From: Pocillopora damicornis
Lineage: Eukaryota
DNA length: 64,000 bases
Direction of reading: 5' to 3'
NCBI RefSeq assembly: GCF_003704095.1
Contig: NW_020845533.1
Location: 310,001 to 374,000, forward strand
Below the pieces are notes generated by a model. That model made no database searches. It was given only the letters and a program-made list of their open reading frames with translations, and was not told the DNA's origin. Positions within the stretch are counted from its first letter, which is position 1. Each line of letters opens with the position of its first letter. Below are positions 1 through 63,741 of this stretch, one piece after another. Position numbers and translations under genes: made by a program.

Positions 1-1821
1 GCTCCAAACGGCCTTTACAGTTTTGTTTGAGGTGCAGGCATGAAATTTGATAGCACGTTCCTCCCCACTCTTCACAAAACTCGTGCTAACTTCAATAGTT
101 TTGTTCATGGCGGATGCGTTAAACTTGATGGATCTTTGATTTCCATCGATACCGTAACCAAAGATAGTCTCAGCAGTTCTGTTGAATCCAGTGGCATTGA
201 ATTTTATGAGCTTCTCATTGGTGAGGTTAACGAAGGTCCATGCTGTCTCAATCGTCTTGTTCATGGCAGATACGTTGAGCTTCAAACTCTTCTCTCTGAC
301 GAAATTCAAATATGATAAGGTTGTTTCGAGAGTCTTGTTTAGGCAGTTTGCTTTAAACTTCAATCCCTTTTCACTTGTAAAGTTGAAAAAAGTCCATGAG
401 GCCTCGGCAGTTTTGTTGAGAGCACTGCCTGAGAACAACAAACTCTTCTCAGTTCTTAAATTGACAAGCGTCCACGTGGCTTTTATGTTCTTATTGGCAA
501 AATTCGCTTCCAATTTCAGGTTCCTCTGTCTGTCCGTACTCAGCAAGGTCCATGTGGCGTTCATCGTTTTGTTCAGGACGCTTCCGTTGAAAATCAACTT
601 CTTCTCATTGGGGAAGTCAAGGAAAGTCCAAGACGAGTTGATGGTCTTGTTTTCTGCACTGGCTTTAAACTTCAATTTCTTTTCGTTGGCAAGGTTCAGG
701 AAGGTCCATGTGGCATCGATGGTCTTGTTGAGAGCACTAGCTTTGAAATTCAGACTCCTTTCGTTTTCCACGTTTGCGAAGCTCCAGGAAGAAGAGATGC
801 TCTTGTTGAAAGCAATTCCCTGGAATTTCACGCTCTTTTCATTTTGCATGTTCAGAAAAGTCAAGGTGGAGTTCATCATCCTGTATCCACAGTGAGACTC
901 GAATCTTAGGGTCTTTTTGGATCCTAAGTTTAAGAAGGCCCAGGTAGCATTGTAATTCTTTCTTCCGGTACTTGCCTTGAATGTGAAGCGTTTTTCGTTT
1001 GGACGATTCAACAACGTCCAAGTGGAGCTGAAGGTCTTGTTTCCATAACTTGCGTTGAAATTTAAGCTCTTCTGATGTTCCAAGTTCAAGAAGGTCAAAA
1101 AAGAATTGATTGTGTTGTTTCCAACACAAGCATTGAACTTCAAAGTCTTCTCATTTCTCAAACTAACCAATGTCCATGTGGCATTGACGGTTTTATTTAA
1201 AGCGGAGGCTTGGAACTCTAAACTCTTCGCTGTGTGGCGGTTGATGACAGTCCAGCTTGCCTGCGCTGTTCTGTTCAGGGCGGAAGCATTGAAACGTACT
1301 CCTTTTTTGTCGCCGAAATGGAAGTATGACCAGATGATCTCGGCGGTCTTGTTCAAGGCGGTGACATTCATTCGTAATCCTTTCTCTTTCCCTGCATTTA
1401 CGTATGACCACACAGCCTCCAGAGTCTGATTCAGAGCTGTCGCATTGAACTTGATGCTCTTTTCTTGTGTTAAATTATGGAAGGTTAGAACACTTTGGAT
1501 GTTATGATTCAATCCCGAGACGTTTAATCGCATTCCTTTCTCTGTAGTGAGGTTCACGTATGACCACACCGCCTCGATGGTCTTGTTAAGGGCTGTTGCA
1601 TTAAACTTCAAGCTCTGATCATTTGTGAGGTTGAGGTACGTTAAGGCTGCCTCAAGGGTCTTGTTTAGGCCAGTTGCATTAAATCGCAGCCCTTGTTCTT
1701 GCCCAGCGTTGACGTAAGACCAGACGGCGTCGACGGACTGGTTCAGGAGGACTCCCTGAAACTTCACTCCTTTATTTTGTGTCAGATTCAGATACGACCA
1801 GATAGCTTCTGCTTTGCTTCC
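1..1821 (-). repeat. Coding tandem repeat, 78-nt / 26-aa unit, 23 full copies plus 1 partial, consensus about NKTI(E/N)ATWTFLNLxNEKSLKFNASAL
   Basis: Exact 26-residue register with no indels from 1821 to 1, e.g. NKTIEAVWSYVNLTTEKGMRLNVSGL, NKTIDATWTFLNLANEKKLKFKASAE, NKTIETAWTFVNLTNEKLIKFNATGF. Confidence 0.95.
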
Positions 1822-2808
1822 AAGCACGGTGCCATTTATTTTCATGGACTTCTCATTAGTCGAGTTTACAATACCTGTGTACCAGCTGATGACACGATTT
1901 TTGTTTTCATGCGTTCCTGTGAATTGAATACCTTTCTCTTGTCCCGCCTTGACATATGATCCACGTAGAGTAAAGGACTGCTTGCATGGGCGGGCAAACA
2001 GGCGAAGGACCCCTTCATTCTGAACCTTGAGATATCTTCCTGTAAGCTCGATTCCTGCCTGTGTTGGCTTGTTGCTGAAGCTAAAAACAAAATCATCTTC
2101 TTCCTCACCAAGTTTTCCATTGAAGCGGATCTTCGTTTGGGTGCAAGTATGATTTGCTAGGAAACTAATCCTCTTCTTTGGGACGTTTAGTTCTCCAGTG
2201 GAAAACAGGTACTTGCCTGGCCAGTACGTCAAGTTGCTAACATATCCATACGCATTAGAATTGTTGTAGAGCTTCGTCAGCTGTTTAATGGTGTAATTTC
2301 TATATGAAGCGGACAACTGGAAACCCATATCTCGATAAAGGCTATCCGCCTCCGAGTTGTTGAAAAAGTGACCATTAACAACGATTGGGTGTCCGAAAAC
2401 AGCGTCTTTTCCAGAATATGTGAGATTCACTGCGTGAGTGATGTTGTTGTAAGTTGCCTCAAACTTGCCAAAATTTAAGCCAAGAGCAGCAGTAGTCACA
2501 CTGAGAAGTTTGCCATCCTTCTTAATCCACAGAGTTCCGTTTGCCTCCAGGTTTCGCTCCCACGTTGCTCCAGGTGTGGACATTACCGCCATCACATCAT
2601 ACTTGTTATCGTCTTCAGTTTGCAAGCGTTCTGCTATCAACTGATATTTAGTGAGCTTAGGGTCTGTGCGTGTCATTGAAATACTGAAGGAGGATGGGCC
2701 AGAAAATGGGAAGTACGGTGACTCGTAGTCACGGTAAGCCAAGGGCACAGACAGCTGACTGCAGAATGTAAGTCCGAGTACACGTGTCAAATTCAGGCAA
2801 GGTGCAGG
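1..2808 (-). CDS. Giant LLTP exon 15 (936 uninterrupted codons, continues off-window)
   Basis: Acceptor tttccaacag|CCT at 2808. Manual translation shows no stop down to position 1 (PAPCLNLTRVLGLTFCSQLSVP...NKTVKAVWS). Probably missing from the ORF track because it has no stop in the window. Confidence 0.92.
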
Positions 2809-5800
2809 CTGTTGGAAACACAAAACTAGATTTTAATCGTGTAATGAAACAGTAAAAGGGAAGAATAAAAAACCTTTTAGTGCATCTGAACGATTTCAGG
2901 AATTTGCTATTTCGAATTGTTTAGGGCGAAATTTTTTCCTGAAATCCAACAACAATAAATAATTCTTTAAGTGTGCTGGATTTAGCTTTAATTCTTGATC
3001 ACACAGTTTGTTCCTATCCCATCTCATGAGACAGTTTCATCCTAACGGCTGTAATTCCGCTTTGATTCAAAGCATGTCTGCATCGTCTCAAATAAAGGTA
3101 AAGATGCATTAGCCCTGTCCTAAACTGCTCACCTCAATCCTCCTCGGTGTTCCGTCAATAGCTAGTTTCTCGTTGTTGAGAGTAACGAAAAGCGATGACC
3201 TACAAGAAAATTAAGAAATACTTAACATATAGCACCACAATCGTCACCAAGTAAGATTGCGTTTCCTACCACGATGACTGCATCATAAAACGGAGAAGCA
3301 CTTGAAAGTTTATTATTAGAATTAATAAAGTTTCCACGATCTGTTTAACCACAATCTCACTTAACCTAGATATCGTTTCGAAAAAGTGAAATAACGAAAA
3401 GAAAATTTTAGTTTTGATAATATTCTTAATAATAATATTAATAATAATAGGCTTTACTTACGATACGTTGACAAACTGAACAGGCTCCTCTGGGACACCC
3501 AGTTCAAACTTCAAGATTTCTCCTTGAGCATAGGATGCATTTCCCTTGAGATGTGTTACCGTGTACAAAGAGGAATTGACAAGAACGCCAGCTTCAGCAT
3601 ACACTGCACTCACTCCCATACGGCCACTCACGTCCACAATAGCACTAAAAAATAAAAACGCCATCGACAAGTGAGACACGCTTAAGGAAAGAAGACTGCA
3701 TAATGGCAGTACTACCGTAAGGCTGAGGTAGAGTGACTTCTACTCCCAGGTCGGATGAGCAATTCCCTTTTATCACTCCCTCATTCTTATGCTTCCCTTC
3801 GTTGTTAACTATGACAACATGGGAGAAAATCCGAAAAATATATATATATATAGCTTAGATGATACCACACCTGTGGCATCATTCGGGGTAGCTTAGTGCT
3901 GACACCTCCTTCCTGGCATCAGCACTGCACTGGTGAGGCCCAGAAGGCTGAACCAGTACAGTCTGCAGTTATATATATATATATATTTAGTATGTATGTA
4001 TATATAAATATATAAATAAATATATATATCTATACGTAAATACAATAAACTAAGGTCAACTCTTTGGCTGTTTACCAGGCCGATCCTAAGTTTATCTTCT
4101 GTGCACCAAAACGCTTTCGGTAATCAAAAATAAACACATCTACTTTTAAACTCCAATCGTCGTAACAGAAACATTAAACTCTGTCCTAAATTATTTTACC
4201 TGGGTTTGACATGGCCACGTATATCAAACCGCATCTTTCCCCAGAACATGTTCCTGATGTCAAACTTTCCGGCGAGTTCTACAGAGGCCACCGTGGTTCC
4301 CTTGGCACTCATTTTAAGCGGCAGACCGAGGATGGTAGGGACTGTAGTCTCAGCGTCCAAGAACATCATGCTTTTACTGAAGCTCTTTTTGCCACCCTTG
4401 GCTAAAGCAATTAATATGTCGATCACGTTGATCTTGTCTACTTCGTCATTTAACCAGCTGATGTCGTCAAAGCTGAGAAGTCTCAATTCGTTACCAAACA
4501 TCTTCACAGAAACAGCCCCAGAAGGATGATGCTTACGGTTATCCATCTACAAACACGTAACGAAATATGAATCAGTTGAGATGAATAAGCATACTGATGT
4601 TAGGGTGAAAAGGGTTAAGATGTAGTCAATCTCTAAGCTATCGTCTCATATCACATTTTGTTGAATGTGTTTTTTACGATTCTACACGTCCTTAGAAGGT
4701 GAAAACTGACAGGCCAGCATTATAATCTCAACATTAATATGCACCCTGCATGACCACAATGTGCTTAGTTCCTCAAGCTTTTTTCTCCTTTTCACTTTTC
4801 TTCCGATGAAAACATTATAAACCTTATTTTCTATCAAAATTTTACAATCAATCTTTAACCAAAAAAAAAAAAACCAGAACTGTGGCCGTATACACAGTCG
4901 TAACAGTGGAAACCACATTACTTCTCATACATTGATAACAAAAAACACGAACTTACCATACGGTGCAATTTGTTCAAGTTATGTTCCACCTTGTTTAAGT
5001 CCTCGTTCAAGCTCCTCTTTTGTTTGTGTTTCCAAGTCTTTACAGTTCTCTCTTCCTTATCCCTCTCCTCGTGGGGCTTCAGGTTGAACATCTGCATAAT
5101 GCGGTCATCAGGGAAATAGCCGTCTTCTCCGAAAAACTGCTCGATAAGAATCTCAAACCCTTCGAAACGTGCACCTGCCTCCAGGACATTGATGGATGCA
5201 CCGAGGACGTCGACGGTGACGTTCACCATGGCGCTGCGTGGGAAGAAACTGGTAGGGTGGTAAATAAGGTGGCTCTGAGCCGATCCACCGAACCTCAGGA
5301 CATCTGTTAAATATAACCACAAGAGACTTGAAATTATGTTTAGTTAGCAAAGTTTTGAGAACCTTCATCTTTATACAGCTGTAACGCCTGAGAACGTGTT
5401 AGTTTGGAGTATTTGGCATTACAACAACTTCTATTAAACCTTTAACTCCTGAGAGTGATAAGCATCTAATTTCTCCTCACAGTATCACCCCTAAATCAAA
5501 CATTAACTTCATGAAAATAAGGGACATGATCAGAAACTCAAGAAGCTCTCGATTGTTAGACAAATTCTCTTTGCAAGCTCCATAGAAAATGTATAAAGAA
5601 TATGGAGAACATGCATACCAATATTGGGGTGTCAAGGATTTATCCGATTGATATCTATCTTTACTTTCGTCAATTATCTGCTTGATTTTCTAGAGAGAAA
5701 TTCTGTCTTCTTCACACATGCAATATGATCTTACCGCTGTAAAATGAACCTTCCCAGGCACGTGAAAACCTTAGCCTATTCAAGTTGAACTCTCGAAGCC

Positions 5801-8800
5801 TCATTCCATTGAGGGCGTCTTTCATTATTTCAGCTTGAGGGAGACCATGAACTGGCTCAGTGGAATCCATGGCGTTAGTCATGTGGGACCAAACAAAAGA
5901 ACCAACTTGATTGTTCACTTCATGCTTTAGGATTTCGGCGATGCTCCTGAACACCTCTGGACTCGGGCACTTCGTGAGGGCAAGATACGCTGCGATACGG
6001 ATCTCGACATCCACATTAAACTCTTCATAGATCTGCAAGACCTGGTCTGTCATCTGCTTACTACAAGGCAAGCGACGCAGGGCCTCAAGAGCTGCGATGC
6101 TCATGTTCACGGGTGCTTCTAAGTTCCAGGCACATCTGAGCAAGACATTTTCGGCGTTTAAAGGTCGACCGGCGTTTCCTATAGCTTTCAGGGTGATGAT
6201 AAAGTTTTCAAAATCTTCGGGTGTTTGGCCCTTGCATTCTTGACCCAGACGGGACAGGAAGAAGTTTTCAGCCTTTGTGATGGGGTTTTCTCGATCCTAT
6301 AAGGAAAATTAAAATTGATTATGTCAGAACTCTTTCATCAAAGCTTTTCGATAGAAATAATAATAATAATAATAATAATAATAGTAATAGTTGTAATCAT
6401 CATCATAATCATAATAATAATAAATGTAACTGAATACGCGCTTTCAAGTAAAATGTTTCAATAACATTTAAGTCTCAGTAAAGTTTAAATGCATAAAGCA
6501 AACATAAGGACAACCAAAGCTAAAAAAAAAAAAACCAACTTAATATAAGTATTGCGCATACGTTAATCTAAGAGTGCACATTTTGGGGGATGCTTTAAAA
6601 CTCAACTGAAACCCTTTAATCCCTATGATCCACTTAATAATTCTCCCAACTTACTGCTACACTTTTCCTAGTAAATTAAACCGGAGAAGATGGTCTTATT
6701 CCAAAATAACGCCCCTTAGCTGATAAGCTGGTCTGTCATCATAAACTGTTTACATGATAACTTATTGAAATTGCTCGGAGAATTTGCGTATAAATCTTCT
6801 AACCCTTTAACTCCCAGAAGTGATAAACATCTAACTTCTCCCTAAGATATCCTTACGTTATCCAGCCAACAGGTAGTGAGAATACTCGAACATATCAAAT
6901 AGAAGTTGTTGTCTTGGTCTGACACCAAATTCTCGCAATTGGTTTAAAAGGAAATATTTGGTGGCTGGAGGGGAGAATTGACTATTATATCTGGGAATTA
7001 AAGGGTTAAAGCTTTTACCAGACTGGTACAGTATTACAAGCTTTACCTGATCATTACAATCCTGCGGCTTGCTCTCGCAAACTTTGTGAATGAGCGTTCC
7101 GAGAGTCAACATGGCGGTTCTTCCAGGGTTCTCCTCACACAGCTCTAGCACGTGCTCAATTGTTTCCTTTGTGGGATTTGCTGCCATAGCCAATCCCGCC
7201 AGAAACATGTTGCCACGCTCATGGTTGACCAGCTTGTTCCTGATGGCATTACTCATGACCTTTGCGCATCCTCCTGTACCACAGTGAGGCAGAGCATCGT
7301 AGAAGTATTCGCTGAAAGAAAAAAAAAGGTCACGTCAGTAAATGAAATTGTCATGTTTTTTCTCAGTAACTGAAGCTTCGACTGACAAAAATGAAAAAGC
7401 CACTCTCTTGTAATCTCGCATCAAGCTGAAAGTGATCATGCTGTAGTTTGTCACATTACAAAAGAAAACTTAAGCCTGCAAGTCAAGTCCTCTGAATATG
7501 GAGAATATTCAATTAAAAATTTATTGAGATTTGATAACGGCTGCCAAAGCCTCTATGAATAAGCTTGGAGTTGTGTGATCACTCAACTACAATTCACTGA
7601 AAAGCATTTCCATGTGATATTTCTTTATCTAACGATGCTGCCGAAACATCAAGATCAAGCCAATGGACCGTATTTCCCCGTAGCGAAGAAGCAAATACAC
7701 TTACTGCATTTTAGGATCTTCCTCGTTGTGGATTTTCTGCCACAAAGTTTCCATGGCTGGCGTGCTAAGCTTGCGGATGCTGAAAACAAGGCTAGAGAAG
7801 TGCTGGGCCGACTCAGGTTTTGTGGAGTGTTTTGACTCCTTGCTAAGGCGGCTTGCCAAGTAAAAGGCATCAGTAATAGCTTCTTGGTTAGACTGTGGCT
7901 GAGCATGCGCATACTTCAGTGACACAGGGCGAAGTCCCTCTAAAATGTAATGAAATCAATTTTTTTTAGAAAGCAAAACCTGACGTCCAATTTTAAGGCA
8001 CAAGTTAAACTTTTCACATTTATGTTTTGTAAACGTGATTGAGAGCTTAAGATAGGAGACTGTTACAATTAGCTTTTGTTTTCTCTTTTGGAACGCTACT
8101 CTTGAAGTTGCATTATTTTAAGTATTTGATTCTTCAGCATGTGTGTTGCCATTTAAACGAAGTCTGCTTGTCTAATAATGGCTTTGAATAAAGGAAAAAG
8201 GAAAACTTCATCGCAACAATCACGATTTCATGCATCTGTCTATCACATCTACTTCATGTTTACAAACTTCTAACGTAAAATCCGTGCATGAACTTAGGAT
8301 TGCATACTAATTACAGAGCTGGAAAACAGAGAGTACAAAAATCAAAATAAACCACCTACCGAGAGGTACGTTAGCTTCAGATGCGGGAAGGATAGACTGC
8401 AATTCCAAAACTTGTCTATAAGGGAAAGAAAATATATCAGCTCTCGAAAATTCTTTTTATTTATTTTAGAGAAGGAGGATTTTTTATAGAGTACAAGTAA
8501 TCAGAAGCTATGAGATGAAAAATTGACTATTCTTGTCAATCGTACATTTTGAAGTACATGCACAAATTGGGAATAGCTTTACATCTCAGACAAAACAAAA
8601 CGAGTCCATTGTACCTTAAGTATTTTCGTATCACAAAAAATATCTCCTACCTTGTTCTGGTAATTGCTCCAGAAGCGTTTTTGTAACCACCAGAGAATGG
8701 ACGGAAAAGATGTTCCTCTTCACACACTACCCTCTGGGTGCGTTTTTTAGCGGTCAGGTACAGCTTGCATGTACTGTTTGAATGCAGTAAGCTGATGGGC

Positions 8801-11800
8801 TGAAAACAAAGGAGATGGTTATGCTACGTCGAAGAAAGGGTATTTAATACATGGCTAAACCATAAGCGTCTCTAAGTTTCCTTAAATATTGCGTGACTAT
8901 AACGGTAAGAGACACTCTACGTCGGACGGTATTCCTTCGGTTGTTATGCAATCCATATCACACTTTCATCGTCATTTTGCCAATATGCTCACGTAACTGA
9001 GAAACGATCGTGACTATACTCTAACTATGATTATATTTATTGTAACGTAAAATTGTCCCTCTTTTAATCATGATCTGAATTTGAACTTAACAATCCCTTC
9101 TGACTTTCGAGATTGCGCTTGTCTCTAAGTGCCTTAAATTCTACTTGACCTCTTGAAATCAATGACAGAAGAACCTCTCTGTTTACCTTTTCTTCGTAAG
9201 AATGGACGTGAATGCCGATGTCGGTCTGTGCACGATCTGTGCACTCAGTAAGATTGCGTGTCTTGTACACGACTTTCGGGCGTCTGCTCAGATGCCGAGA
9301 TTTAATCTCGTAGCGCACCTTGCACTTACCAACGACATCGTCCTAAAATACAAGACAAAGAACTGAAAAGGTTAATCTCCCTTATACATACAGTTTAATC
9401 AGAAGGGAAGCCTTGGGGACAATATGTCTCAAGGACAACAGGGCCCCTTTCACAAGATGCGCCATGACGTCCTCTAAGCTTTTAGGCCAACTAAGAAACT
9501 TTCATTCGGGAAGTCGATATTTTCAAACAACATTATCGATTCAACGAAAGTACAAGAGGAGCAACCAAAGGATAAATAATCAGCCAAACACATACAAAGA
9601 GAGTAAAAAAATTTGACAATAAAGATGTGGTAGGATCATCCTCTACAAATGCACCAATAATCTATCTATTCAACTCTCGTGAGTGATCAAAATAGAATTT
9701 CTCCTCACCACATGAATACAATACCAAGCAGGCAAGTGATGAGAATTAGGAAGAATGTAATTCAAGAGATCAATATTTGATCCAAAACCTAATTCTCCGA
9801 ATAAAAATCATAACAATTGTATGGCAGACAGTAAGGAGAATAACTAATGAGATTTTGGTGATGCAAGGACTCAACTTAGGATTTATTTCTTTAATGGTGT
9901 GCAGTTTCGTGTAAAAGCTTACACCCCATTCAAACTGACATACTTCACCGTTGAAAGTTTAACTTTTCAAATATTTGAGAGAAACACGGAAAAGTAGATT
10001 TAGTCAGATTCGATTCCAGCGCGACTTGTTTGTAAGAATCAGCATAAAGAAGATCTTACCTCCTCTAAGGTGGCATGGTCGTCAACAAACTGCACCTGAA
10101 ATGCACTGAGGATACCTCTCTTGATGTTCAAGACGTGAGAGGGCTCCTCTGGATGGGCGAGGATATTTGTGATGCGTCCCGCATCCATTCTGAAAACAAG
10201 GTCTTGAGCTTGAAGCTCTTCAGCAAAAGCTGTTGATCCCTGGGATATCTGATAATCCAAGGGACCTGGGTTCTTGCTCTGGGCTTCCCAGAGCTCAACT
10301 GTGTCGATCTGGAGAATAAACAGGTTTGACAAGATTTTAACCTCAAGCAGGAACTTGTTTTTTTGGCTGAAATAAGTGGGCAAAGTGGATTTCAACTTTA
10401 GATCCCTGTGTTTTGTTAAAAGTAAGAGATAAGTTGTCGTAAGCAAACTAAACCTGGAATACATTAGTCCTTGAATTTTGATTTTTTTCCAAAACCAACG
10501 CCCCCGCCCCCGTCCCACCCACCTTGGAAAAAAATTTTTTCTGGATGCTCCAGCATGTTGCCAAAGAATATTTTTTTTGCTATTTTCAACGCGCGAAGAA
10601 AGCGTCTGATAATATGAGTCAAGTCCACAAATTACAATGCAAACTTTATGACAATTAATCACCAAAGGAAAACGTGAGGAATTCGTCGAAGAGGCGGTCT
10701 GGCACGCAAGATGGTAAATATGAGGGAATTTTGGGGGTACAAAGTGCACTCTTAAAAAGGTTTTTTCCCAATTTTCTCGCGTTTCAGCGTCGTTGAGTGG
10801 GAGGTGACGGTACGCTGATATACAGCTGTTTCATCGGGCAATTGATTGGTCACAGTTTGAGAAGGAAATAAAAAACCTTATTCTAAACCAACAAAAGAAG
10901 CACATGACTACTCGGGTCTCAAGTGTGAGGAATGTTTTTTTAACATATTGCTCGCCAACTTTCGTGAGATTTCCGCTTTGCTTGTAATGAACTATTTCAA
11001 GACTTGAAAACCTTCGAGGTGGTCATTGGTTACTTAAGAATATGGACTACACAGTTCTTGTTTAGTCTTTCAGCAACAAGTTTCGTGCTGCGGTTTAGTG
11101 GAATCTACATTTCTTTGCCTAGGCGCTTTTCCAAGGTCAAAATTCTTACGGGAAGCGATATGTTTGTGGAAGGTCCGATTGCATACAGGATATGACTTAA
11201 AATTGGATATCACCACCAACTGAACATTGAACCTCGAAGAAATCAGAGACAAATGAGCATTATAATTATCTTTTTTTCAAAACGCCGGATGTAATCTGAC
11301 TCGGCATGCAATTAGCTGCGTAATGAATCCCCTAGACTTCCATTTGTTGCGTTTCTCCCACAGTTACATTCGCTCTTACTGATGAAAACAAAAGTATTTT
11401 AATTGTCGTTAAGCTAAGCATAAGTTTTCTGCAATTGTATGATCAGTGAATGTTGAAAATCGATTCCTGTCAACCTCATCTTTTCATCACATAATGCTGC
11501 ACGTTTCCGATACGGGGAATTTTAGTACTCGATGCATGTTCAGTCTGAAGGTAACGGTAAACAAGAAAAAAACACTCGAGTCTATCTAATGGCTACAGAA
11601 ATCCTCTAGGGTATTTCCAGATCGAAATATTCAATTCGTAGACAAGTTTATGCGACATAAAAAGTAAGCTTCTAGTAGGTTCTCAATTCTCTCGCGCGCT
11701 TTCTCACGCGCAGTCTTTCAAAACCAGCTAAAAATAATCTTGTGAAACTCGACTTTGGACCGGTTAGCCAGGTTTACATTAACATGATTCCTGCACCTCT

Positions 11801-14182
11801 GACCTCATCATGGATAAACTGTCTCAATTTTCGTCTTCTGTTACAAGCAAATAACTTTTGCCAATTTAACTGAAGTGAAAACGCCATTACTACCCTATTT
11901 TAGACTGGCCGTGGACACACACTAGCAATCGAAGAAAAATTTAGCCATCGCCAATTCTCTTCATAAAATGATGCAATGTTTTGTAAAACAATAGCTCCGA
12001 AGAATTAAAATCCATAGATTATCCACTAGGCTTCTGCATACCGCCAGGTTGAGGTAAATTAACCATTCAGACAATGTATCAGTAACACTAAATAACTTGA
12101 AACGTTACGTAATAAAGAAAGAAAAATGCTTTAAGAGAAGGGATGCCAAAATTTGCACATTGAAACGACAGAATCAATATTAAATTTTCATCCTCGTAGG
12201 GTGGGATGGGGGCGGGAAGCTTGAAGCACTACAAGAGGCAAAATAAATTGTGCGAAGTAAGAGTCGAGGGAAAAAAGGATAGTCGTTTTCATACCTAATC
12301 TTCAAGAAAGTATTCATTTTGTAGACCAATAAGCTGATTAGCAACATCACGTCTTATGAAAACACGCAGATTCCCCTCGCTACGTCTCTTTGTATCTTGT
12401 AAAGTCCGAAAGATTTACCCCAGGAATAACCGAGTACGTGGGATAACACGAAATGTTTGGGAAAGCGCTGCGGCTAGTTAACATTTTATATCATCAAAGA
12501 AAGCGAGTTTTCGTCAGCATAGGTCAAAACTTTTACGAAGTTATGAGAACTGAGAACCTCATTAGTCAAAAGGAATGAGTCTAACAGTGGATTAGAAGGC
12601 GAGATGAGACCGGAAAGAGGGGCTACTATAGGATTGGATAAAATTTATATCCAATAACCAAGGAAAGCAGCATTTCACACGAAACCAAAATCACTTTGCA
12701 AATTATTCTAAAACTGACGATTGACTACAAAGATTGCTTTCTTCGATTATGATGGTCTTATCAAGGTCGACTAGTTTTCATAAAGAGCTATCTTCCGAAA
12801 CAAAAACAACCTCGTGATTGAAGAGCAAATATACCCCTATCAATCACCAAGCATCGAGTTTCGAGGGTCTATAAAAAAAACTTACCTTCAAGACATGCTG
12901 ACATGGTGCAACAGACTTGACGACACATCGTGCGCGGATTTTCAACCCTGAGCGGGCAGAGGACGCGCCTGTAACACTACTTATTGTTTCTCCTTCATAG
13001 TTGTAAGGAAATTCCTTTAAATGGTGAAATCTGTTCGACCCTTTGTAAAAGAGAAGCAAAAAAAAAAGGTCAATCAATCTGGAAAGAGAGCAAAACATGT
13101 AACACAACACACGTGCCCTGTGACATTTGCCACTGTCCCACGCGTGCTTCCAGCGTGCTGCAAGCCAATCAAACCCCATGCATTCTGTGGAATTGATTGT
13201 CAACAAGTCCGTCGGAGATTCGATGTCATTTCCGGAATTTTTTTTTTCTACCGCGAGAGTCCCATGACTCAGAATAATGCAAGGGGAAAACGCAAGATTG
13301 ACAAAAAAATACGTTATAATGATTGTAAAGTTACATGACAGGACCTTGTGATCTCAAAAGGCAAAATCCCACTGATCAGGATACCGTGGCAATCTGCCAT
13401 TTTCGAACACGTTCACTTCTCGCGGCTCGATAACTTCGCTTAAATTTAATTCGAGACAAAGATAATTTTTAACGCAGAAAATCTAATCATTACTTACTTT
13501 TGTCGCATTCCGGCGGCCTATCTCTATGAAGAGATCTGGGCGCTGTAAGAAATGTACAGAAGTAACACGTTAATCAAGGCATCGAGCTCCCTGAGGAACA
13601 GAGATGCTGTGACATAATAGAAAACATAAGGAACAATAAACGATTCAGGAGAACCTGAAACAAGATCAACCAAAGATAAAAAGAACAATCGCCAATAATT
13701 TTTCTGTGTCCCTCCAGCATTTAACATAGATCTTTTCTCTTAAGTTCTTTCGGGACAGAACCAGATCGACACGATAAAGAACCGATGTGCCCCCGAGGTA
13801 TCCATGGATTTCGTGTTCTTAGCTTGCTCGGGCAAATTTTACCCGAACTTCCCTCAGTACAAGGGCAAATTTTGACAATTTGACAGCACATTGTTTCCAA
13901 ATCGATCTACGTCTCAGTGATTTAAGGGGCAACAGCAACTAAGAATACAGAAGGAGCGAAATCGACCGAGCGAAAAAATTTCCAAATCATGTCGAAATAG
14001 TGCACACGCAGGCAAATGCTGCAATCAAGAAAGATGCAAAATTGATACAGCTCGGTATTTTGAGTACAAAATCCTGATCTGATTGTCAAAGAATAAAACC
14101 TTCTTGAAGTAAAATGAAAGCGATAAAATCACGTACCCGCAAATGCCCCTGTGGCCAACAACACGAATAAAATGGATCTCAT
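1..14182 (-). CDS. Large lipid transfer protein (apolipophorin II/I / apoB / vitellogenin superfamily), 3'-truncated by the window edge; 15 exons, 1890 aa visible
   Basis: Exons: 14182-14137, 13542-13498, 13040-12886, 10308-10060, 9342-9187, 8799-8651, 8415-8360, 7939-7705, 7311-7047, 6296-5735, 5303-4957, 4546-4200, 3644-3462, 3199-3133, 2808-<1. All are GT-AG with matching phases. Signal peptide MRSILFVLLATGAFA. Vitellogenin_N/LLT motifs: YNYEGET, VLNIKRGILSAFQ, EEDDVVGKC, CEEEHLFRPFS, LKAIGNAG, EIRIAAYLAL, NQVGSFVWSHM, FFPRSAMVN, EQFFGEDGYFPD, VPTILGLPL. Confidence 0.93.
3853..3970 (+). mobile_element. Short element with a degenerate type I hammerhead ribozyme, inserted in a (TA)n tract in an LLTP intron
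   Basis: actgca-CTGgTGA-ggcc-cagaa-ggct-GAAc-cagtaca-GTC-tgcagt at 3924-3969; TA repeats on both sides. Confidence 0.6.
5434..5642. mobile_element. Degenerate piggyBac-type MITE
   Basis: Starts ttaaacctttaactcc and ends gtcaaggattta; body similar to the partial copy near 59030-59140. Confidence 0.55.
6356..6424. repeat. (AAT)n-rich microsatellite
   Basis: aataataataat... run with interspersed variants. Confidence 0.85.
6803..7005. mobile_element. piggyBac-type MITE
   Basis: TIRs ccctttaactcccag / ctgggaattaaaggg, flanked by ctaa and ttaa; about 200 bp, non-coding. Confidence 0.75.
9670..9876. mobile_element. Degenerate piggyBac-type MITE (same family as 61890-62085)
   Basis: Shares gtgatcaa..agaatttctcct, caagtgatgagaat, tgatccaa.acc.aattctcc and ggcaga.agtaaggaga with the copy in a DOT1L intron. 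Confidence 0.6.
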
Positions 14183-41512: not shown

Positions 41513-41863
41513 ATGCATGCACTATCTTTGACTGCTCTTGCCTTGAACATAGTCTTAGCAATAATTTTCAGCAGCGCAGGAGAAGAAAGGTTACATGAAA
41601 ACGCAGTTCCAATCATTTCTATGGGTAAATTGAGCGCAGGCAAACTATGCCGTTTTTCCCCTCAATTTTGGTCTTTTTCATTTCGATTTGTTCTAGAATT
41701 GCGCGCGATTGAAATTGACCCTACAGACCCACCCAAGGTCACAGATGTCACAGCAACTGAAAGAAGGATTTCGTCAGCTAAACGATCTCAATGCAGCACC
41801 AGACCTAGCCTTACAAGATTTAGACGAGGAATGCGCAGGTTAACAGGGAACATGGGAGTTTAA
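41513..41863 (+). CDS. Candidate small secreted prepropeptide, 2 exons (41513-41624, 41697-41863), 92 aa; possibly a pseudogene
   Basis: aacATG start; signal-like MHALSLTALALNIVLAIIFSSAG; 72-nt G|gtaaat...pyrimidine tract...ttctag intron; acidic spacer, RR/KR sites, basic C-terminus; AATAAA at 42109. Confidence 0.45.
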   Translation: MHALSLTALALNIVLAIIFSSAGEERLHENAVPIISMGKLSAGKLCRFSPQFWSFSFRFVLELRAIEIDPTDPPKVTDVTATERRISSAKRSQCSTRPSLTRFRRGMRRLTGNMGV

Positions 41864-44962: not shown

Positions 44963-47181
44963 ATGGCCGGATTTTCCTGCAGCGCAATTTTAGCACTCTA
45001 TCTAACCGCGATAACGTTTCCTGAAGGAGACGCTCTGAGCGTGAACCGTGATAAAGCTACTACATCGCCTAGTAGTAACACGTCGCTAGCACATGTTAAA
45101 ACTCCGACGTCAATTCCCACTTCAAATGGATATGTGCAAGATCAGAAACCGACCGCCAGTGGAAACAACGACCTATATACCGAGGATTCAGATATGTACA
45201 AATTGAGAATCGAGATTATCAAAGCCAAAATACTTAAAAAACTTCAAATGGACAAACAACCAGTCGTCCACATAGAAAAAACAAAGGACAAAATGATCGC
45301 AGACCTTCTTTTAAGTTTAAATCTTATTGATATGAATGACGATGACAGTGAAACGGAAGAGTACGAAGACAGAAAGTATGACAAGACGAGCAAACTCATT
45401 GTTTTCGGCGAAAAAGGTAAGAGGAACAATTTTGCGTGCTCTAAGGGGTAGATACGAAGTCGCATTTTGTCATGTTTCTCCACAGATTATTTCCATCAAG
45501 GTCATGGTCCGGCTTTCAAGTTTTGCCTTTGTTTTCAGGACGTTTTGATACCGGCATGGTCAAGAGGGCAGCAGTTAAAATATTTCAGCATATTTCTTGT
45601 CAATTCACTCGTCACCGCAGACAGTAACAGAGCAAAGTTCAAGAGCTAATGTTGCAACAACTTCATAATTACACAAAATGCTGCCTTGACGTTCTAGATA
45701 TTAGTTCTCGGCACCTCATGCGGTGTTAACTGAAATAACGTGTTTTGTTTTGAATTCTGCTTCTAAGTTAATGGTCATTGTGTTACGAACATTGGGAGGC
45801 GGAGTCGCTCTATATGTCCTTTCACAACCGCTCAGAGAGTGCTTTGGAAATTGTTTTAGTCCTGTCACGTAGGTTTATTGCAAAATATGGAGGGAGAGTG
45901 AACCAATTTTCGTCATTCCTTACTTCATTAAAACCTTGCATCGGTAGCTTGTAGTTTATCTTCAACTAAGGACACGGAATCTTAGAAACATGTGCCATTC
46001 TACCATCTCACATTAACAAAATTATCCAGACAGTACCTATGAAAGAATGTCAAACTTTATATAAAAGGAGGGGCACTAGGAACAATTGGTATTAATTCAA
46101 ACAACAGTTAATAGCAGGTGAAACAATAGGATGCATGCAAATAATCAAAACCTTCAATGTTTTCATATTTGACAAGTATGTGGTATACAAACGTTCTAAA
46201 GAGGCATACAAAAAAATTCACATGGGCTAGCTTTAATTTTTTCGCTGCTAACTGATTGATGATCAAATATCCCTTCTAATTATGTTACAAAACTATATTT
46301 AACTTAGTCTAATGAATTACCCGCTTTCTTTCTCTTCAATTTTAGCTAAACTTTCACCTTCGAAATCAAAGCGCAAATTTTCCGAGAAGTTGATTTTCCA
46401 GTTTAGAATTGAGCCAAAATCGCTGTCCAGTTTAGTGCCCTCTGCGTTTCTGTGGGTTCATAAACGGAAAAGCAGACAACACGAGCTAAGGAAGAAAACA
46501 CTTCACATTTATGCACATGACAAAGAGTCACCCAGAGGCACCTCCAAAGTACCAATCCGCAGAACGACGAAGACCAAGTTAAAATCAAAACGAACTGGCT
46601 CAGGATGGGAAATGATAGACGTGAAAGAAATCGTTCGGCACTGGTTTAACAAGACAGCTAACCAATACGATGCTGGCAATGGAACTGGCAATGGAACCGA
46701 CAATGGCGTACAGGCCTTAGAAATCTCTTGCCTGGACTGTGATTCGAACGTTAGTCAGCTAATCAACTCGCGAGGCAGACTACGGCCATTTCTCGTTATC
46801 GACTTAGAGAAGCCAAGAACACTGAAGAGGAAAAAACGCGAAGATAACGGTTGCCCTGCCGGGCAAGCAGTATCGTGCTGTCGCCGCACTTTTTACGTGG
46901 ATTTCGTCAAAATTGGCTGGGATTGGGTAATACATCCGCAGGGATTCTATGCCAATTTCTGTGAAGGTTCTTGTGACAGCCTTCATACGAGAGTTACTAG
47001 TGAACGAGCCATCATACTGCAAGAGGCGGCAAAAAAAAACCTGGGTCCACCTGCTTACACTGGTAGTTGTTGCTCCCCCACAAAAATGTTGCCCTTTTCA
47101 ATGCTGTACTGGGACGATGAGTATAACATTGCAAAAAAGGACCTACAAGATTTGAAAGTTAAAGAATGTGGCTGCTCTTAA
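44963..47181 (+). CDS. Activin / inhibin-beta-like TGF-beta family ligand precursor, 2 exons (44963-45416, 46346-47181), 429 aa
   Basis: Signal peptide MAGFSCSAILALYLTAITFPEGDA; prodomain LRIEIIKAKILKKLQM, GSGWEMIDVKEIVRHWF, RPFLVI; furin site RKKR (46828-46839); 113-aa mature domain with 9 Cys (CCRRTFYVDFVKIGWDW...FCEGSC...CCSPTKM..SMLYWDDEYNI...ECGCS). Confidence 0.95.
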
Positions 47182-49799
47182 AATGCAAAGGAAGACATAA
47201 GTAGAGCCATTGACATCCGCAGACGCGTTTAGCTTATTGAGTCTGAAGGTAACAAGGCTGTTTGAAAGTTAGCTATCTATTTTTGAAGCAAATTTTTTGA
47301 CGTGGGATGTTGGATGTTTAGATTTAAGATGAGAAAAAAAAAGGTGACTTTAGTCTTCATATATAAATTCCTCAAAAGAGTACAGAAGAGAAATATGATA
47401 GCCTCTTCAATACCCCGAGGCATTATACCTCTGAAGTGACGATTTTATTGGTTTTGATACGTAAATACCTTGATCATTTAACCTCTTCGAATTCACGTAG
47501 AAGTGCAATGTTGCTATTTGATATCGAGCTTAATGCTCATCTAGGGCTTTGATTTATTTTTGCACGCTAAAGAAATAAACATAACTGATAGAGTAGAGTA
47601 TTTAAGACGATGAACTGACCCCTTGTAGCGCCACGTGTATGATGCCCTTCGATGGACATAAACTATTGTGATGTGATAATTTGCTAATTCCGGTGGCGCT
47701 GCGAGATAATTCGGGTGTTGATGTCCATCTCAATCACGCCTATCTTAATACCAAATTGAAACTGGAAATGGCAAATTTATCTTACAAAAGAACAACTGAT
47801 CATCGGCAAACAAGGGATATATATACATGTATGTTAGGAATGACGCTCTGTGGGGTTGTCTGAACATTGAGGTCTTCCATATGCAAAGCATTGCGGAAAA
47901 CCATTACTAAATGTATCACTTTGCATGCAAAGTAGGTTTCTAAAACCATTGTTTAAGGATGGTTGAAAAGACAAATTGAAAGCAGAAGCAATATCAAAAC
48001 CCTGTTGATCAATACTGATTGTTGAGAAATAATTGTTAGACCAGGAGTAAGGGAAGGGGGTTGATGGCTGACTCCTAACATTGAAATTCTCCGTCTGAAA
48101 TACTACCTAATTCAAGTTTATGGTTCTTAATTCGGTAGCGGTTTCATATCATTTGAGAAGGAAGGGCTAACAAATTTTTTTCAGGTGATAGGTGGTTAAT
48201 ACCCAAAAAGTTCAGTAACACTTCCCCAACCAACGGACCTTTGCGAGGAAACCGTCTTCCTATGAAAGACAAAGAACCCAAGTCTGACTTAGAGAAATAA
48301 ATATTTTGATATTTTAAACAGCCTCATTTCTTCCTGAAACCTGGCACTCAAGTGCTGTTTAATATGTTCTTAAATGCAAGGTAAAAATCTGAAAGTAGTT
48401 CTGCATTATACTACTATTAACTCACTTGTTGTGCGCTCAAAAAAGCGGCCGGCGGAATGATTTGAAATTTTTCGTAAATTTAGAGAGTATATAATGTGGC
48501 ACAGCCGTTTGAAAAAAACTTTTTGTAAGGTAACTTGGTGAGATTTTCTGTGACGAGTGTGTTAGTTTTTTTAAATTTTAGACCTGTGAGGCAACTTAGA
48601 ATGTTTAGTAGGCAAGAAAAACACACGATTTTTCAATAAAGTATTGTTTTCATCCTATAGATTCCACGAACATTTATGTTTTTCTTAACGAGGGGTAATT
48701 AGTATATTTTGGGAAGCAATGGATACCCAATTTCAGACCAGTGGACGGTCTCGTTGAAAAGTTCTTTTTTAAATGCAGGGAGGGGAGGAGAATCTTTTAG
48801 TTCCAAATTATCTATAAGAAGGAGAAAGAAAGTAAAACTAAAAGCAGCTTTCACGCCGAATGGCTTAACCTAATTAAGTCACATTCAGCCCGAGCTCGAT
48901 ATACGAGAACATCTGCACTCGATTGTCATTACGCAATAAAATTCGTGTAAGTAAAATCCTGACATTCGGAGCCAAATATCAGGAATGTAACCGAAAAATA
49001 ATTGGATATTTCGCCCCATTCGAGTGTTTCTAAGTCTTCAGTGAGGTTTTTAGGTCGAGTATGGGCTATTTAGGCGGTTTTAAGTTCCTTCGCTTTTTTA
49101 TGTACATATATTTCCCAACACAAATCTTGTTATTCTTTCTGTTGCGTAATAAAAAAGTACCGAAAGGTTTACTCATACATCGAAGTGAAGCTTCCTGTTG
49201 TTCAGTTGCAAAGGAAAAAGCGCTTTGAAGAAAGAGCGTCGCTACATACTCCAGTAAGCAATTTCCTCCTTCCCTCAAATGTATGCAGAATAGGAAGTAG
49301 GTCCACTGAATTTTCAAGCCAAACTACGCTCGTTGAGACGACTGGGTGGGGTCAACACCCAGAGAGGTGCTGTAAAAGCTTGTTGTACGGACAGTTATCA
49401 GGAACCCAAAAAGATCAATCGTCACATTAGAACAATGGCAAAACTCCCCTAATAACGCAAATGAAACACATGAACCAGTACGTGCCCCATGGGGTACACA
49501 AAAACATCACGTCCGATAGTCAGACGTTTGCCCTCAGCAATGTTTTTCAAATCCAGCAAAGTTGAAGTCGTCAAAGGTCACTAAAAATTTACTGTTGATG
49601 AGTGTCATATGAGAAGAGTTCGTTTCATTTACCAGATAACATTTAAATTCTTTAGGATCACCCTGGGAAAAAGTATCAAATTGAAATTTAAAACTGAATA
49701 GTTCGGCGGGTGTCGGAGAAAAATGTAATGTTGGATGTTTGCTTTTGATGTTCTTGAAATTCTTTTAAGAACTTAAAATAGTACCAGATTCTCTAAGAA

Positions 49800-50947: not shown

Positions 50948-51048
50948 TTATTACAAAATGTTGCAACCCTTATTACAAAATACTGCAACCGTTATGACAA
51001 AATGCGCAGGTTGTTTCAAAATACGTTTTTGTTACAAAATGTCGCAGC
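50948..51048. repeat. Degenerate tandem repeat of about 21 bp (ttacaaaatg core), possibly a transposon subterminal repeat
   Basis: Five caaaat-containing units. Confidence 0.55.

Positions 51049-57134: not shown

Positions 57135-63741
<6,607 letters not shown>

What the first reader, a model, noticed from the sequence alone, without database searches (positions are those of the whole stretch)
1..1821. Gapless 26-aa amphipathic beta-hairpin repeat array in an apolipophorin/apoB-like protein: a possible modular lipid belt
Seen: 23 full units plus a partial one in perfect 78-nt register. Each unit has two segments with strict hydrophobic/polar alternation (T-I-x-A-x-W-x-F and S-L-K-F-x-A-x-A-L) joined by polar turns (NxxNEK, LNKT). 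Established: apoB wraps lipoprotein particles with a long continuous amphipathic beta-sheet, but that sheet has no obvious sequence repeat. Inference: each unit is one beta-hairpin, so the array builds a 46+ strand one-sided sheet by tandem duplication. Copy number could set particle size, and the array may show how the apoB-type belt arose. I do not recognise the repeat as a named family.
Basis: partly seen in the sequence, partly recalled or inferred. Interest (0 to 1): 0.85.

Follow-up and report, generated by a model that had tools for sequence, protein, structure and literature searches.

The report
Repeat-built lipid belt in coral apolipophorin
A stony coral's relative of apolipoprotein B builds much of its lipid-wrapping beta-sheet from about 30 gap-free 26-residue hairpin units. 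The unit number differs between coral and sea-anemone species, which gives a natural test of whether belt length sets lipoprotein size.

Summary
On the minus strand, 24 clean 26-aa units lie in window 1-1872. The array runs off the window edge to 30 clean units plus degenerate ones. It sits in one 4,518-aa open exon that polyA RNA contigs show to be transcribed and spliced.

The gene is the coral orthologue of apoB/apolipophorin. Its order is signal peptide, Vitellogenin_N, open beta-sheet, DUF1081, array, helical tail, VWD.

One face of the sheet is hydrophobic. The N-glycosylation sequons sit on the other face and in the turns.

The unit is conserved across Hexacorallia, with 14-36 copies. 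Copy number explains the length of the beta region (27.2 aa per unit, r2 0.997). Pfam has no family for the unit, and I found no paper describing it.

Lipid binding and control of particle size are inferred, not shown. I rate it a new variant of a known kind. The scan noted this same stretch in two other first-stage notes.

The parts
1..1872 (-). 24 clean 26-aa (78-nt) hairpin units, numbered 2-25 of the array. The array continues off the window's left edge for 6 more clean units and several degenerate ones (contig G000:C2168 down to about 308,900).
   Evidence: Register table. Unit-HMM spacings all 26. Lag-26 score 2.17 vs -0.69 +- 0.07. AF2 gives two strands per unit.
1873..1950 (-). Degenerate first unit (KAGQEKGIQFTGTHENKNRVISWYTG), the transition from the irregular sheet into the array.
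   Evidence: 2 of 26 matches to the consensus, but predicted as strands continuous with the array.
1951..2499 (-). Non-repetitive up-and-down beta-meander between DUF1081 and the array.
   Evidence: AF2 model 2 shows strands of 8-12 residues with short turns, pLDDT mostly 80-90.
2500..2799 (-). DUF1081 (PF06448) domain at the start of the giant exon.
   Evidence: Pfam E 2.8e-08, 34.6 bits against a cut-off of 25, aa 12-111 of the open frame.
2809..3132 (-). Intron. The giant exon starts at 2808.
   Evidence: RNA contigs of 4 runs join 2808 to 3133, with ends CT..AC on the + strand, which is GT..AG on the minus strand.
3133..3197 (-). Small coding exon.
   Evidence: RNA contig pieces and joints. 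tblastn with orthologue P0053 aa 935-958.
3460..3644 (-). Exon, end of the Vit_open_b-sht domain (PF09172).
   Evidence: Pfam E 3.3e-06. RNA joints 3197|3460 and 3644|4200.
4200..4547 (-). Exon, Vit_open_b-sht (PF09172).
   Evidence: Pfam E 4e-21. RNA contigs.
4960..5313 (-). Exon, Vit_open_b-sht (PF09172), with a conserved multibasic site KQKR|S at 5014-5025.
   Evidence: Pfam E 2e-22. tblastn. Multibasic site conserved in six hexacoral orthologues.
5736..6296 (-). Exon, C-terminal part of Vitellogenin_N (PF01347).
   Evidence: Pfam E 3.8e-22.
7041..7313 (-). Exon, Vitellogenin_N.
   Evidence: Pfam E 3.9e-12.
10060..10323 (-). Exon, Vitellogenin_N.
   Evidence: Pfam E 7.1e-12.
12883..13035 (-). 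Exon, start of Vitellogenin_N.
   Evidence: Pfam E 6.2e-07.
14132..14182 (-). Probable first coding exon with the signal peptide MRSILFVLLATGAFAGT. The ATG is at 14182.
   Evidence: Read from the sequence. Matches the N-termini of full-length orthologues P0053 and P0023. The exon boundary itself was not checked with reads.

Best explanation
The window holds the 5' half of the single apoB/apolipophorin-type large lipid transfer protein gene of a pocilloporid stony coral, probably Pocillopora damicornis.

Directly after the conserved lipid-transfer module and DUF1081, a 13.5-kb exon encodes a long up-and-down antiparallel beta-sheet. Its core is an array of about 30 gap-free 26-residue units. 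Each unit is one beta-hairpin:
- strand A, positions 7-16 (EKSLKFNASA)
- a two-residue turn, L17-N18
- strand B, positions 19-26 plus 1-4 of the next unit (KTIEATWT-YLNL)
- a turn at positions 5-6

The cross-strand register puts L10, F12, A14, A16, I21, A23, W25 and Y1 on one face, with Lys at the edges of that face. It puts E7, S9, K11, N13, S15, T20, E22 and T26 on the other face.

I infer that the hydrophobic face lies on the lipid of a lipoprotein particle, as the apoB100 beta-belt does. I also infer that the polar face and the turns, which carry up to three N-glycosylation sequons per unit, face the water and are heavily glycosylated.

Adding or losing units lengthens or shortens the belt by about two strands (roughly 1 nm) at a time. 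Across Hexacorallia this changes the beta region from about 1,240 to 1,810 residues.

Shown here: the repeat, its expression, the gene family, the predicted hairpin register, the amphipathic pattern, conservation of the unit, and the link between copy number and length.

Inferred only: lipid contact, glycan occupancy, belt geometry on a particle, and any effect on particle size.
For: Repeat and register.

Gene family and order of domains: Vitellogenin_N, Vit_open_b-sht, DUF1081 and VWD all score above Pfam cut-offs. The exon map comes from a full-length orthologue. Named orthologues are 'Apolipophorin' in Stylophora pistillata and Acropora cervicornis.

Expression: polyA RNA-seq contigs from four runs cover window 1-2808 without indels and splice at 2808|3133, 3197|3460 and 3644|4200. 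One contig of 16.4 kb spans four exons. Orthologue P0053 is a 6,307-aa ORF on a 19.7-kb Logan contig.

Structure:
- AF2 on 10 stacked units: pLDDT 91.4, 20 strands of 10-12 residues, turns of 2-3.
- AF2 on 624 aa with 16 true orthologue rows: pLDDT 80.5, 46 strands, the same register, and a sheet continuous from DUF1081 into the array.
- Foldseek: the top four PDB matches of the long model are apoB100 (9e9r, 9bde_A, 9ea7, 9bdt_A; E 2.5e-07 to 5.7e-06, prob 1.00, rmsd 20-24 A, against about 39 A for LptD barrels).
- The short model also hits apoB100 with prob 0.99-1.0 and rmsd 11-15 A, against 27 A for porins.

Match to the apoB100 belt: that belt has 120 strands, mean 11 residues, is 4 nm wide, and starts right after the baseplate (PMC11839476). 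Strand length and position are the same here.

Amphipathy: column hydropathy alternates. The beta hydrophobic moment has z 5.9 at 160 degrees and 1.2 at 100 degrees. The sequon Asn sits only at positions 18, 13, 3 and 22, never on the hydrophobic face.

Conservation: the sea-anemone and coral unit consensus sequences are nearly identical. Third-codon identity between units is 35%, so the units are kept by selection, not by homogenisation.

Copy number: 14-36 units. Beta-region length between two conserved anchors = 859 + 27.2 (+- 0.5) x units, r2 0.997, n = 12. Pocillopora and Stylophora differ by exactly one unit, 26 aa.
Against: No coordinates of the models were available to me. The one-sidedness therefore rests on strand parity and column hydropathy, not on measured burial. 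L2, L4 and often position 24 are hydrophobic yet fall on the 'polar' face.

Two of the five AF2 models of the 10-unit tile had pLDDT about 55. The pTM of the long model is 0.42.

The first alignment had only 8 rows, and they were built from internal repeats.

No lipid, glycan or particle data exist for this protein. In Nematostella the orthologue ApoB co-localises with fatty acid only partly (10.1101/2022.01.24.477498).

The 12 species in the regression fall into two or three related groups, so they are not independent points.
Confidence: 0.75

Rival explanations
1. The array is a beta-meander, but it does not lie open on a particle surface. Instead it curls into a very large barrel-like or cup-like domain, or pairs face to face with another sheet (its own post-array beta region or a second molecule). 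That would enclose lipid in a cavity, as vitellogenin and MTP do, rather than belting a particle.
Against: The rmsd to barrels is 22-29 A even though nearly all residues are aligned, and it falls as the barrel gets wider. It is lowest for apoB and the 36-strand SprA, which fits a weakly curved open sheet. A run of 60-130 strands far exceeds any known barrel. Foldseek ranks apoB100 first. Gap-free growth in one-hairpin steps across species is easy for an open belt and hard for a closed barrel.
Confidence: 0.15
2. The main role of the array is to display a dense coat of N-glycans, as a mucin-like hydrated, protease-resistant or lectin-binding scaffold in the mesoglea or on secreted material. On this reading, the amphipathic pattern serves only the protein's own folding.
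For: There are 53 sequons in the array against 17.7 +- 3.5 expected, and 244 in the exon against 55.8 +- 7.0. The N13-x-S and N18-x-T sequons are conserved from anemones to corals. Echinoderm and amphioxus orthologues are also saturated with sequons.
Against: Acroporid arrays keep the repeat and its hydrophobic pattern with only half as many sequons, 0.9-1.0 per unit against 1.8. So the hairpin is more conserved than the glycan sites. The array sits exactly where the belt starts in a lipid transfer protein. A glycan coat and a lipid belt do not exclude each other.
Confidence: 0.07
3. Each 26-aa unit is one coil of a beta-solenoid (beta-helix), with the nearly invariant Asn18 forming an asparagine ladder.
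For: A unit of 26 residues and one almost invariant Asn per unit (29 of 32) are typical of solenoids. This is from my own knowledge of pectate-lyase-like and LRR folds.
Against: Both AF2 runs give two long strands (10-12 residues) and two tight turns per unit, and antiparallel neighbours. A solenoid would have three short parallel strands. No solenoid appears among the Foldseek or VIA matches. Asn18 is replaced by Asp, Lys or Ser in many Acropora units with no loss of the repeat.
Confidence: 0.02

Closest known systems
Beta-belt of human apolipoprotein B100 (PDB 9e9r, 9ea7, 9bde, 9bdt; PMC11839476)
   Same: The same superfamily and the same place in the protein, directly after the N-terminal lipid-transfer module and DUF1081. 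A continuous antiparallel amphipathic sheet with strands of about 11 residues. It gives the best Foldseek matches of the 624-aa model. The total beta region is of similar size: about 1,680 residues between anchors here, against 1,774 belt residues in apoB100.
   Different: The apoB100 belt has irregular strands (3-16 residues), nine large inserts and only a weak 28-aa periodicity in residues 1500-2000. The coral belt has a gap-free 26-aa module repeated about 30 times. The coral protein keeps a C-terminal VWD domain, lacks the ApoB100_C family among its precomputed Pfam hits, and is about 15 times richer in N-glycosylation sequons.
Insect apolipophorin-II/I precursor and other invertebrate apolipophorins
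   Same: The same order of domains, Vitellogenin_N, open beta-sheet, DUF1081, beta and helical regions, then VWD. A conserved multibasic site sits in the lipid-transfer module, where, by my recollection, insect apoLp-II/I is cut by furin. Public annotation calls the coral orthologues 'Apolipophorin'.
   Different: The bilaterian members examined show only weak periodicities of 50-57 aa in their beta regions. They are shorter (3,300-4,800 aa, against about 6,000) and are depleted in sequons.
Nematostella ApoB (v1g84136; 10.1101/2022.01.24.477498)
   Same: It is described as the single cnidarian apoB orthologue. Other sea-anemone proteins of this family examined here carry the same 26-aa unit, with 14-15 copies. 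It supplies the only functional data for the group: expression in endocytic gastrodermal tissues, and partial co-localisation with labelled oleic acid in mesogleal cells.
   Different: That paper contains no occurrence of the words 'repeat' or 'beta-sheet'. I did not examine the Nematostella sequence itself.
Outer-membrane beta-barrels (FimD, LptD, BtuB, VDAC, Tom40)
   Different: They are closed barrels of 19-26 strands in membranes. The rmsd is 22-29 A and sequence identity 3-8%. The coral protein is a secreted animal lipoprotein component with 60-130 strands. This is a resemblance of topology only.

Membership tests
Large lipid transfer protein superfamily, apoB/apolipophorin (APO) clade | N-terminal lipoprotein module (Vitellogenin_N, PF01347) | tested here: met
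   Four exons in the window hit PF01347 above the cut-off, covering profile positions 1-590.
Large lipid transfer protein superfamily, apoB/apolipophorin (APO) clade | Open beta-sheet domain (PF09172, DUF1943) | tested here: met
   Three exons, E 2e-22, 4e-21 and 3.3e-06.
Large lipid transfer protein superfamily, apoB/apolipophorin (APO) clade | DUF1081 (PF06448) following the open sheet | tested here: met
   E 2.8e-08, 34.6 bits against a cut-off of 25, at window 2500-2799.
Large lipid transfer protein superfamily, apoB/apolipophorin (APO) clade | Long amphipathic beta region after the N-terminal module | tested here: met
   AF2 predicts 46 strands in 624 aa. Beta hydrophobic moment z 5.9. 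ApoB100 is the top Foldseek match.
Apolipophorin-II/I type (as opposed to vertebrate apoB) | C-terminal von Willebrand D domain | tested here: met
   The exon at L004:8560-8970 (minus), downstream of the giant exon, hits PF00094 with E 1.5e-09. The orthologues have it too.
Apolipophorin-II/I type (as opposed to vertebrate apoB) | Furin-type cleavage site inside the lipid-transfer module | tested here: inconclusive
   KQKR|S at window 5014-5025, with a multibasic site conserved in six hexacoral orthologues. Cleavage itself cannot be tested here, and the insect position is from memory.
Vertebrate apolipoprotein B-100 | ApoB100_C domain (PF12491) and absence of VWD | tested here: not met
   The precomputed Pfam hits of the coral orthologues list VWD and not PF12491, while sturgeon, paddlefish and python apoB list PF12491 and no VWD. 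The window's own tail was not scanned against PF12491.
Vertebrate apolipoprotein B-100 | Binding to an LDL-receptor family member and assembly into a lipid particle | not testable with these tools
   Needs biochemistry.
Beta-solenoid repeat proteins | One coil of short parallel strands per repeat | tested here: not met
   Two antiparallel strands of 10-12 residues per unit in both AF2 runs.
Any named repeat family (Pfam-A, PDB sequences, ESM Atlas clusters) | A significant match of the 26-aa unit or the array | tested here: not met
   Only sub-threshold, scattered Pfam hits in the array. No PDB sequence hit at E <= 1. No usable Atlas hit. Only 15 proteins matched among 1.84 billion cluster representatives; at least the nine best are exon ORFs or fragments of this same gene family.

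The most novel reading that the evidence does not exclude
The hexacoral apoB-type belt is a quantised, glycan-coated ruler. The number of 26-aa hairpin units (14-36) sets belt circumference and hence lipoprotein particle diameter, roughly 15 to 22 nm if the belt closes a ring.

The same way of building a belt, tandem duplication of hairpin modules, arose repeatedly in the apoB/apolipophorin clade. Echinoderms have a 35-aa sequon-saturated array, molluscs, arthropods and tunicates have weak 50-57-aa periodicities, and vertebrate apoB-100 has a faint 28-aa trace. On this reading the apoB belt as a whole originated from a duplicated hairpin.
Probability: 0.3. Interest if true: 0.78.

Novelty: new variant of a known kind. 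Interest (0 to 1): 0.6.

Why it matters
The apoB100 belt was resolved only in 2024, and it is irregular, huge and hard to manipulate. Here evolution has made the same kind of sheet from a near-ideal module, one hairpin of 26 residues with no gaps, and has varied the number of modules 2.5-fold between living species.

That makes a long-standing question directly testable: does the length of the amphipathic belt set lipoprotein size? The test is to compare particles from anemones or short-array corals with those from long-array corals, or to express arrays of a defined number of units.

It also offers a small, repeat-based model system for the folding, lipid binding and glycan shielding of amphipathic beta-sheets.

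For coral biology, it describes the main candidate carrier for moving lipid through the mesoglea.

The patchy, extreme sequon enrichment in hexacorals, echinoderms and amphioxus, against depletion in vertebrates, molluscs and arthropods, is an unexplained pattern that deserves its own study.

Tried and rejected
- Tandem Repeats Finder on the DNA found no 78-nt array. The units are too diverged, at 51% nucleotide identity.
- A stacked alignment of overlapping 12-unit tiles failed. MAFFT staggered the tiles by their true overlap (A1). I replaced it with non-overlapping 10-unit tiles (A2).
I did not read through any stop.
- The PDB sequence search with the 944-aa window exon gave no hit at E <= 1.
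- The ESM Atlas gave no usable hit.
- The sub-threshold Pfam hits in the array (BTD, Peptidase_S66, Tab2-like_N and others) are all below their cut-offs and scattered, so I dismissed them.
- Beta-solenoid reading: rejected on both AF2 runs.
- Closed-barrel reading: not excluded by fold scores alone, but disfavoured (see the rivals).
- Concerted evolution or recent expansion: rejected. Third-codon identity is 35%, and the units are one-to-one orthologous between the window and Stylophora.
- L002 on contig C4375 is not a second gene. It is a scrap of about three units with stop codons.
- No complex prediction was run, because the report claims no protein-protein binding.
- I built no joined spliced protein of this gene. 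Exons were searched one by one by reference, and natural orthologue proteins stood in for the full length.
Full report
**1. The observation**

The repeat is on the minus strand. Window 2832 down to 1 is one open frame. Laid in rows of 26 residues, it is in perfect register from window 1872 to 1. That gives 24 clean units, preceded by a degenerate one at 1873-1950.

The window is G000:C2168:310001-374000. With the flanking contig fetched, the frame stays open for 4,518 codons, down to C2168:299279.

A profile built from the units finds 30 clean units with all 29 spacings exactly 26. Degenerate, shifted units follow. The consensus is YLNLTNEKSLKFNASALNKTIEATWT.

The mean BLOSUM62 score at lag 26 is 2.17, against -0.69 +- 0.07 in shuffles. 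Tandem Repeats Finder finds nothing in the DNA. The units are 51% identical in nucleotides and only 35% at third codon positions. So this is an old repeat held at the protein level, not a recent expansion or an assembly artefact.

**2. The gene**

- Upstream exons on the same strand hit Vitellogenin_N and Vit_open_b-sht.
- The first 100 residues of the giant exon hit DUF1081.
- An exon just downstream of the giant exon hits VWD. All of these are above Pfam cut-offs.
- A full-length orthologue (P0053, 6,307 aa) maps exon by exon from about window 13,035 to the contig beyond the window.
- A signal-peptide-like start, MRSILFVLLATGAFAGT, lies at window 14182.

This is the architecture of the apoB/apolipophorin clade of large lipid transfer proteins. 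I searched the exons one by one and built no joined protein.

**3. Expression**

PolyA RNA-seq contigs of four runs from four studies cover window 1-2808 with no indels. They join 2808|3133, 3197|3460 and 3644|4200, with GT..AG ends on the minus strand. One contig of 16.4 kb spans four exons. These are contigs, so they show presence and splicing, not expression level.

**4. Relatives**

phmmer of the 650-aa array against 1.84 billion cluster representatives gave only 15 hits. At least the nine best are exon ORFs or fragments of the same gene family in other cnidarians. Named members include 'Apolipophorin' of Acropora cervicornis.

A search with the N-terminal module of P0053 returned named full-length orthologues:
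- Stylophora pistillata 'Apolipophorin'
- Oculina
- Montipora
- the sea anemone Actinostola
- the octocoral Dendronephthya
- Hydra
- many bilaterian apolipophorins

The window's units are 18-26 of 26 identical to their one-to-one counterparts in Stylophora, apart from window unit 12, which has no counterpart there. The assembly has 234.35 Mb in 4,393 contigs, which fits the 234-Mb Pocillopora damicornis assembly (PMC6208414). I infer a pocilloporid, probably that species.

**5. Structure**

I made two AlphaFold2 runs with differently built alignments.

- Ten units, with eight rows of non-overlapping tiles from four genomes stacked in register (A2): mean pLDDT 91.4 and pTM 0.69. The model has 20 strands of 10-12 residues joined by turns of 2-3 residues. 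Three of the five models scored about 90 and two about 55.
- Window 937-2808 (624 aa), with 16 rows of true orthologues (A3): mean pLDDT 80.5 and pTM 0.42, with all five models at 75-80. The model has 46 strands and the same register in the array. The non-repetitive 200 residues before the array form the same kind of meander, continuous from DUF1081.

Each unit is therefore one hairpin:
- strand A at positions 7-16
- a turn at 17-18
- strand B at 19-26 plus 1-4 of the next unit
- a turn at 5-6

A solenoid would need three short parallel strands per unit. It is not predicted, and no solenoid appears in any fold search.

**6. Fold comparison**

Foldseek on the long model ranks four human apoB100 entries first (9e9r, 9bde_A, 9ea7, 9bdt_A). 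Their E-values are 2.5e-07 to 5.7e-06, prob 1.00 and rmsd 20-24 A. LptD barrels follow at about 39 A. The short model hits apoB100 with prob 0.99-1.0 and rmsd 11-15 A, against about 27 A for porins.

|---|---|---|---|
| 19-26-strand OM barrels | 15-18 | at most about 330 | 22-29 A |
| apoB 9coo_A | 11.5 | 248 | 18.2 A |
| apoB 9bde_A | 8.8 | 535 of 624 | 25.5 A |

Chains over 3,000 residues, which include the full apoB100 models, are not aligned by that tool.

My reading is that all of these share the up-and-down meander and none matches in global shape. The rmsd falls as the target's curvature falls. So the model is a weakly curved open sheet, but I could not inspect coordinates to confirm this.

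The apoB100 belt has 120 strands of mean length 11, is 4 nm wide, and starts right after the baseplate (PMC11839476). Strand length and position match here.

**7. Amphipathy and glycan sites**

Mean hydropathy by column alternates:
- Hydrophobic: positions 10, 12, 14, 16, 21, 23, 25 and 1.
- Polar: positions 7, 9, 11, 13, 15, 20, 22 and 26.

With the predicted pairing (14 with 21, 12 with 23, 10 with 25, and 25 with 12 of the next unit), the hydrophobic positions share one face. K8, K19 and N3 lie at its edges.

The beta hydrophobic moment is 5.9 SD above shuffles at 160 degrees and 1.2 SD at 100 degrees. Exceptions are L2, L4 and often position 24, which are hydrophobic on the other face.

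N-x-S/T sequons in the giant exon, against shuffled sequence of the same composition:

| Region | Sequons | Expected |
|---|---|---|
| Array | 53 | 17.7 +- 3.5 |
| Helical tail | 160 | 27.4 +- 4.2 |
| Whole exon | 244 | 55.8 +- 7.0 |

In the array the sequon Asn sits at position 18 (25 of 30 units), 13 (15 units), 3 (7 units) and 22 (6 units). It is never on the hydrophobic face. Whether the sites are occupied is unknown.

**8. Distribution and copy number**

The unit-HMM finds the following:

| Group | Proteins | Units |
|---|---|---|
| Stony corals, long arrays | window, Stylophora, Oculina, Montipora, Acropora, P0053, P0001 | 29-36 |
| Hexacoral proteins of unknown species | P0003, P0039 | 15-16 |
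| Sea anemone and close relatives | Actinostola, jgi61, jgi62 | 14-15 |
| Octocoral and hydrozoan | Dendronephthya, Hydra | none |

Dendronephthya shows only a faint lag-26 signal, as do the related exon ORFs P0006 and P0007. Hydra shows no clear one.

The anemone consensus, FfNlt.EKsLKFNASALNKTvEAaWS, is almost the coral one.

I measured the number of residues between two conserved anchors: LTKYQL in DUF1081, and LTWNTST at the end of the beta region. It is 979-1,019 outside Hexacorallia, 1,239-1,289 in the short-array proteins and 1,655-1,810 in the long-array ones. A regression on unit number gives 27.2 +- 0.5 aa per unit, an intercept of 859 and r2 0.997 for n = 12. The points are not phylogenetically independent.

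The window and Stylophora differ by one unit, exactly 26 aa. The first eight units are collinear between the window and the distant coral P0001, while later units are not.

At 13 residues and about 0.48 nm per strand, which is my assumption, the beta region would span about 46 nm with 14 units and about 68 nm with 36. The apoB100 belt is 61 nm.

**9. Beyond corals**

- Four vertebrate apoB-100 sequences share a weak lag-28 periodicity in residues 1500-2000, -0.18 to -0.26 against a shuffled maximum of about -0.55 +- 0.04.
- Echinoderm orthologues have a strong 35-aa repeat with about four sequons per unit.
- Molluscan, arthropod and tunicate members show weak lags of 50-57.
- Sequon density is 3-5 times expectation in hexacorals, echinoderms and amphioxus. 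It is 0.2-0.6 times expectation in vertebrate apoB, molluscs, most arthropods sampled, Styela and Hydra.

So the statement that apoB has no obvious repeat is roughly right for vertebrates. Module-built belt regions seem to recur in the clade, and the hexacoral one is the cleanest.

**10. Known or new**

The gene family, its presence in cnidarians and some biology of the Nematostella orthologue are known (10.1101/2022.01.24.477498). The orthologues are annotated as 'Apolipophorin' or 'uncharacterized'.

Four full-text searches found no description of this repeat. Pfam, PDB sequences and the ESM Atlas have no family for it.

I therefore rate it a new variant of a known kind: a known protein family and a known kind of sheet, in a so far undescribed modular, copy-number-variable and sequon-saturated form.

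Two other first-stage notes of this scan describe the same stretch from the neighbouring window. They are not independent evidence.

**11. Verdict**

Confidence that the array is a hairpin-per-unit amphipathic sheet forming the belt of the coral apoB/apolipophorin orthologue: 0.75.

The particle-size corollary and the origin story are open, with probability about 0.3.

Interest: 0.6.

Noticed in passing
Contig beyond the window: exon aa 1751-4518 (window about -2420 to -10720; L005 and L004): After the beta region, the same exon encodes about 2,770 residues of helix-like sequence with 160 N-glycosylation sequons, against 27 expected. It includes 11-aa repeats VQNYTxxLxAx at exon aa 3190-3270. 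That is the period of the amphipathic helices of exchangeable apolipoproteins. The Stylophora orthologue carries a precomputed Apolipoprotein A1/A4/E (PF01442) hit.
   Followed up: partly
window 5014-5025 (minus): A multibasic site KQKR|S lies in the open beta-sheet exon. It is conserved as RRRRR, RGKR, RRRR or RGRR in six hexacoral orthologues. This is a likely furin-type cut, like the one that splits insect apoLp-II/I.
   Followed up: partly
P0181 (Patiria miniata) aa 2600-3020; also P0184 and P0180: Echinoderm apoB-like proteins carry a separate 35-aa tandem repeat with about four sequons per unit (NNMTGF..F.RI..NASLNFTSKLANLTT....E).
   Followed up: partly
P0089 (Branchiostoma APOB), P0187, P0185 and others: Sequon density splits the clade. 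It is 3-5 times expectation in hexacorals, echinoderms and amphioxus (282 sequons in 4,197 aa). It is 0.2-0.6 times expectation in vertebrate apoB-100, molluscs, most arthropods sampled, Styela and Hydra. I have no explanation.
   Followed up: partly
P0187, P0185, P0186, P0189 (vertebrate apoB-100), residues 1500-2000: A weak but shared lag-28 sequence periodicity occurs in the first beta domain of four vertebrate apoB-100 proteins.
   Followed up: partly
L002 = G000:C4375:170925-174212, around 1544-1792: A scrap of about three units of the array, 81% identical in DNA to window 313-608, lies on another contig. It has stop codons and sits next to 375 N. It is a pseudogene fragment or assembly debris.
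   Followed up: partly
L008:3140-3943 (orthologue P0039): One coral orthologue has a run HHHHHHHHRHHH inserted exactly at a hairpin turn of the array. It is one of the few indels seen in any array.
   Followed up: no
P0013 and P0014 (JGI metagenome 'hypothetical proteins'): Two unrelated-looking proteins matched the array weakly (E about 1e-04). They have their own 26-27-aa periodicity. Their origin and fold are unknown.
   Followed up: no
window 3417-3449 and 3970-4034: Simple AT-rich repeats, (ATAATAATATTA)n and (TA)32, lie in two introns of the gene.
   Followed up: no
window 41513-41863 and 44963-63741: Other first-stage notes on this window concern a candidate secreted prepropeptide and a TGF-beta ligand next to DOT1L. 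I did not examine them.
   Followed up: no
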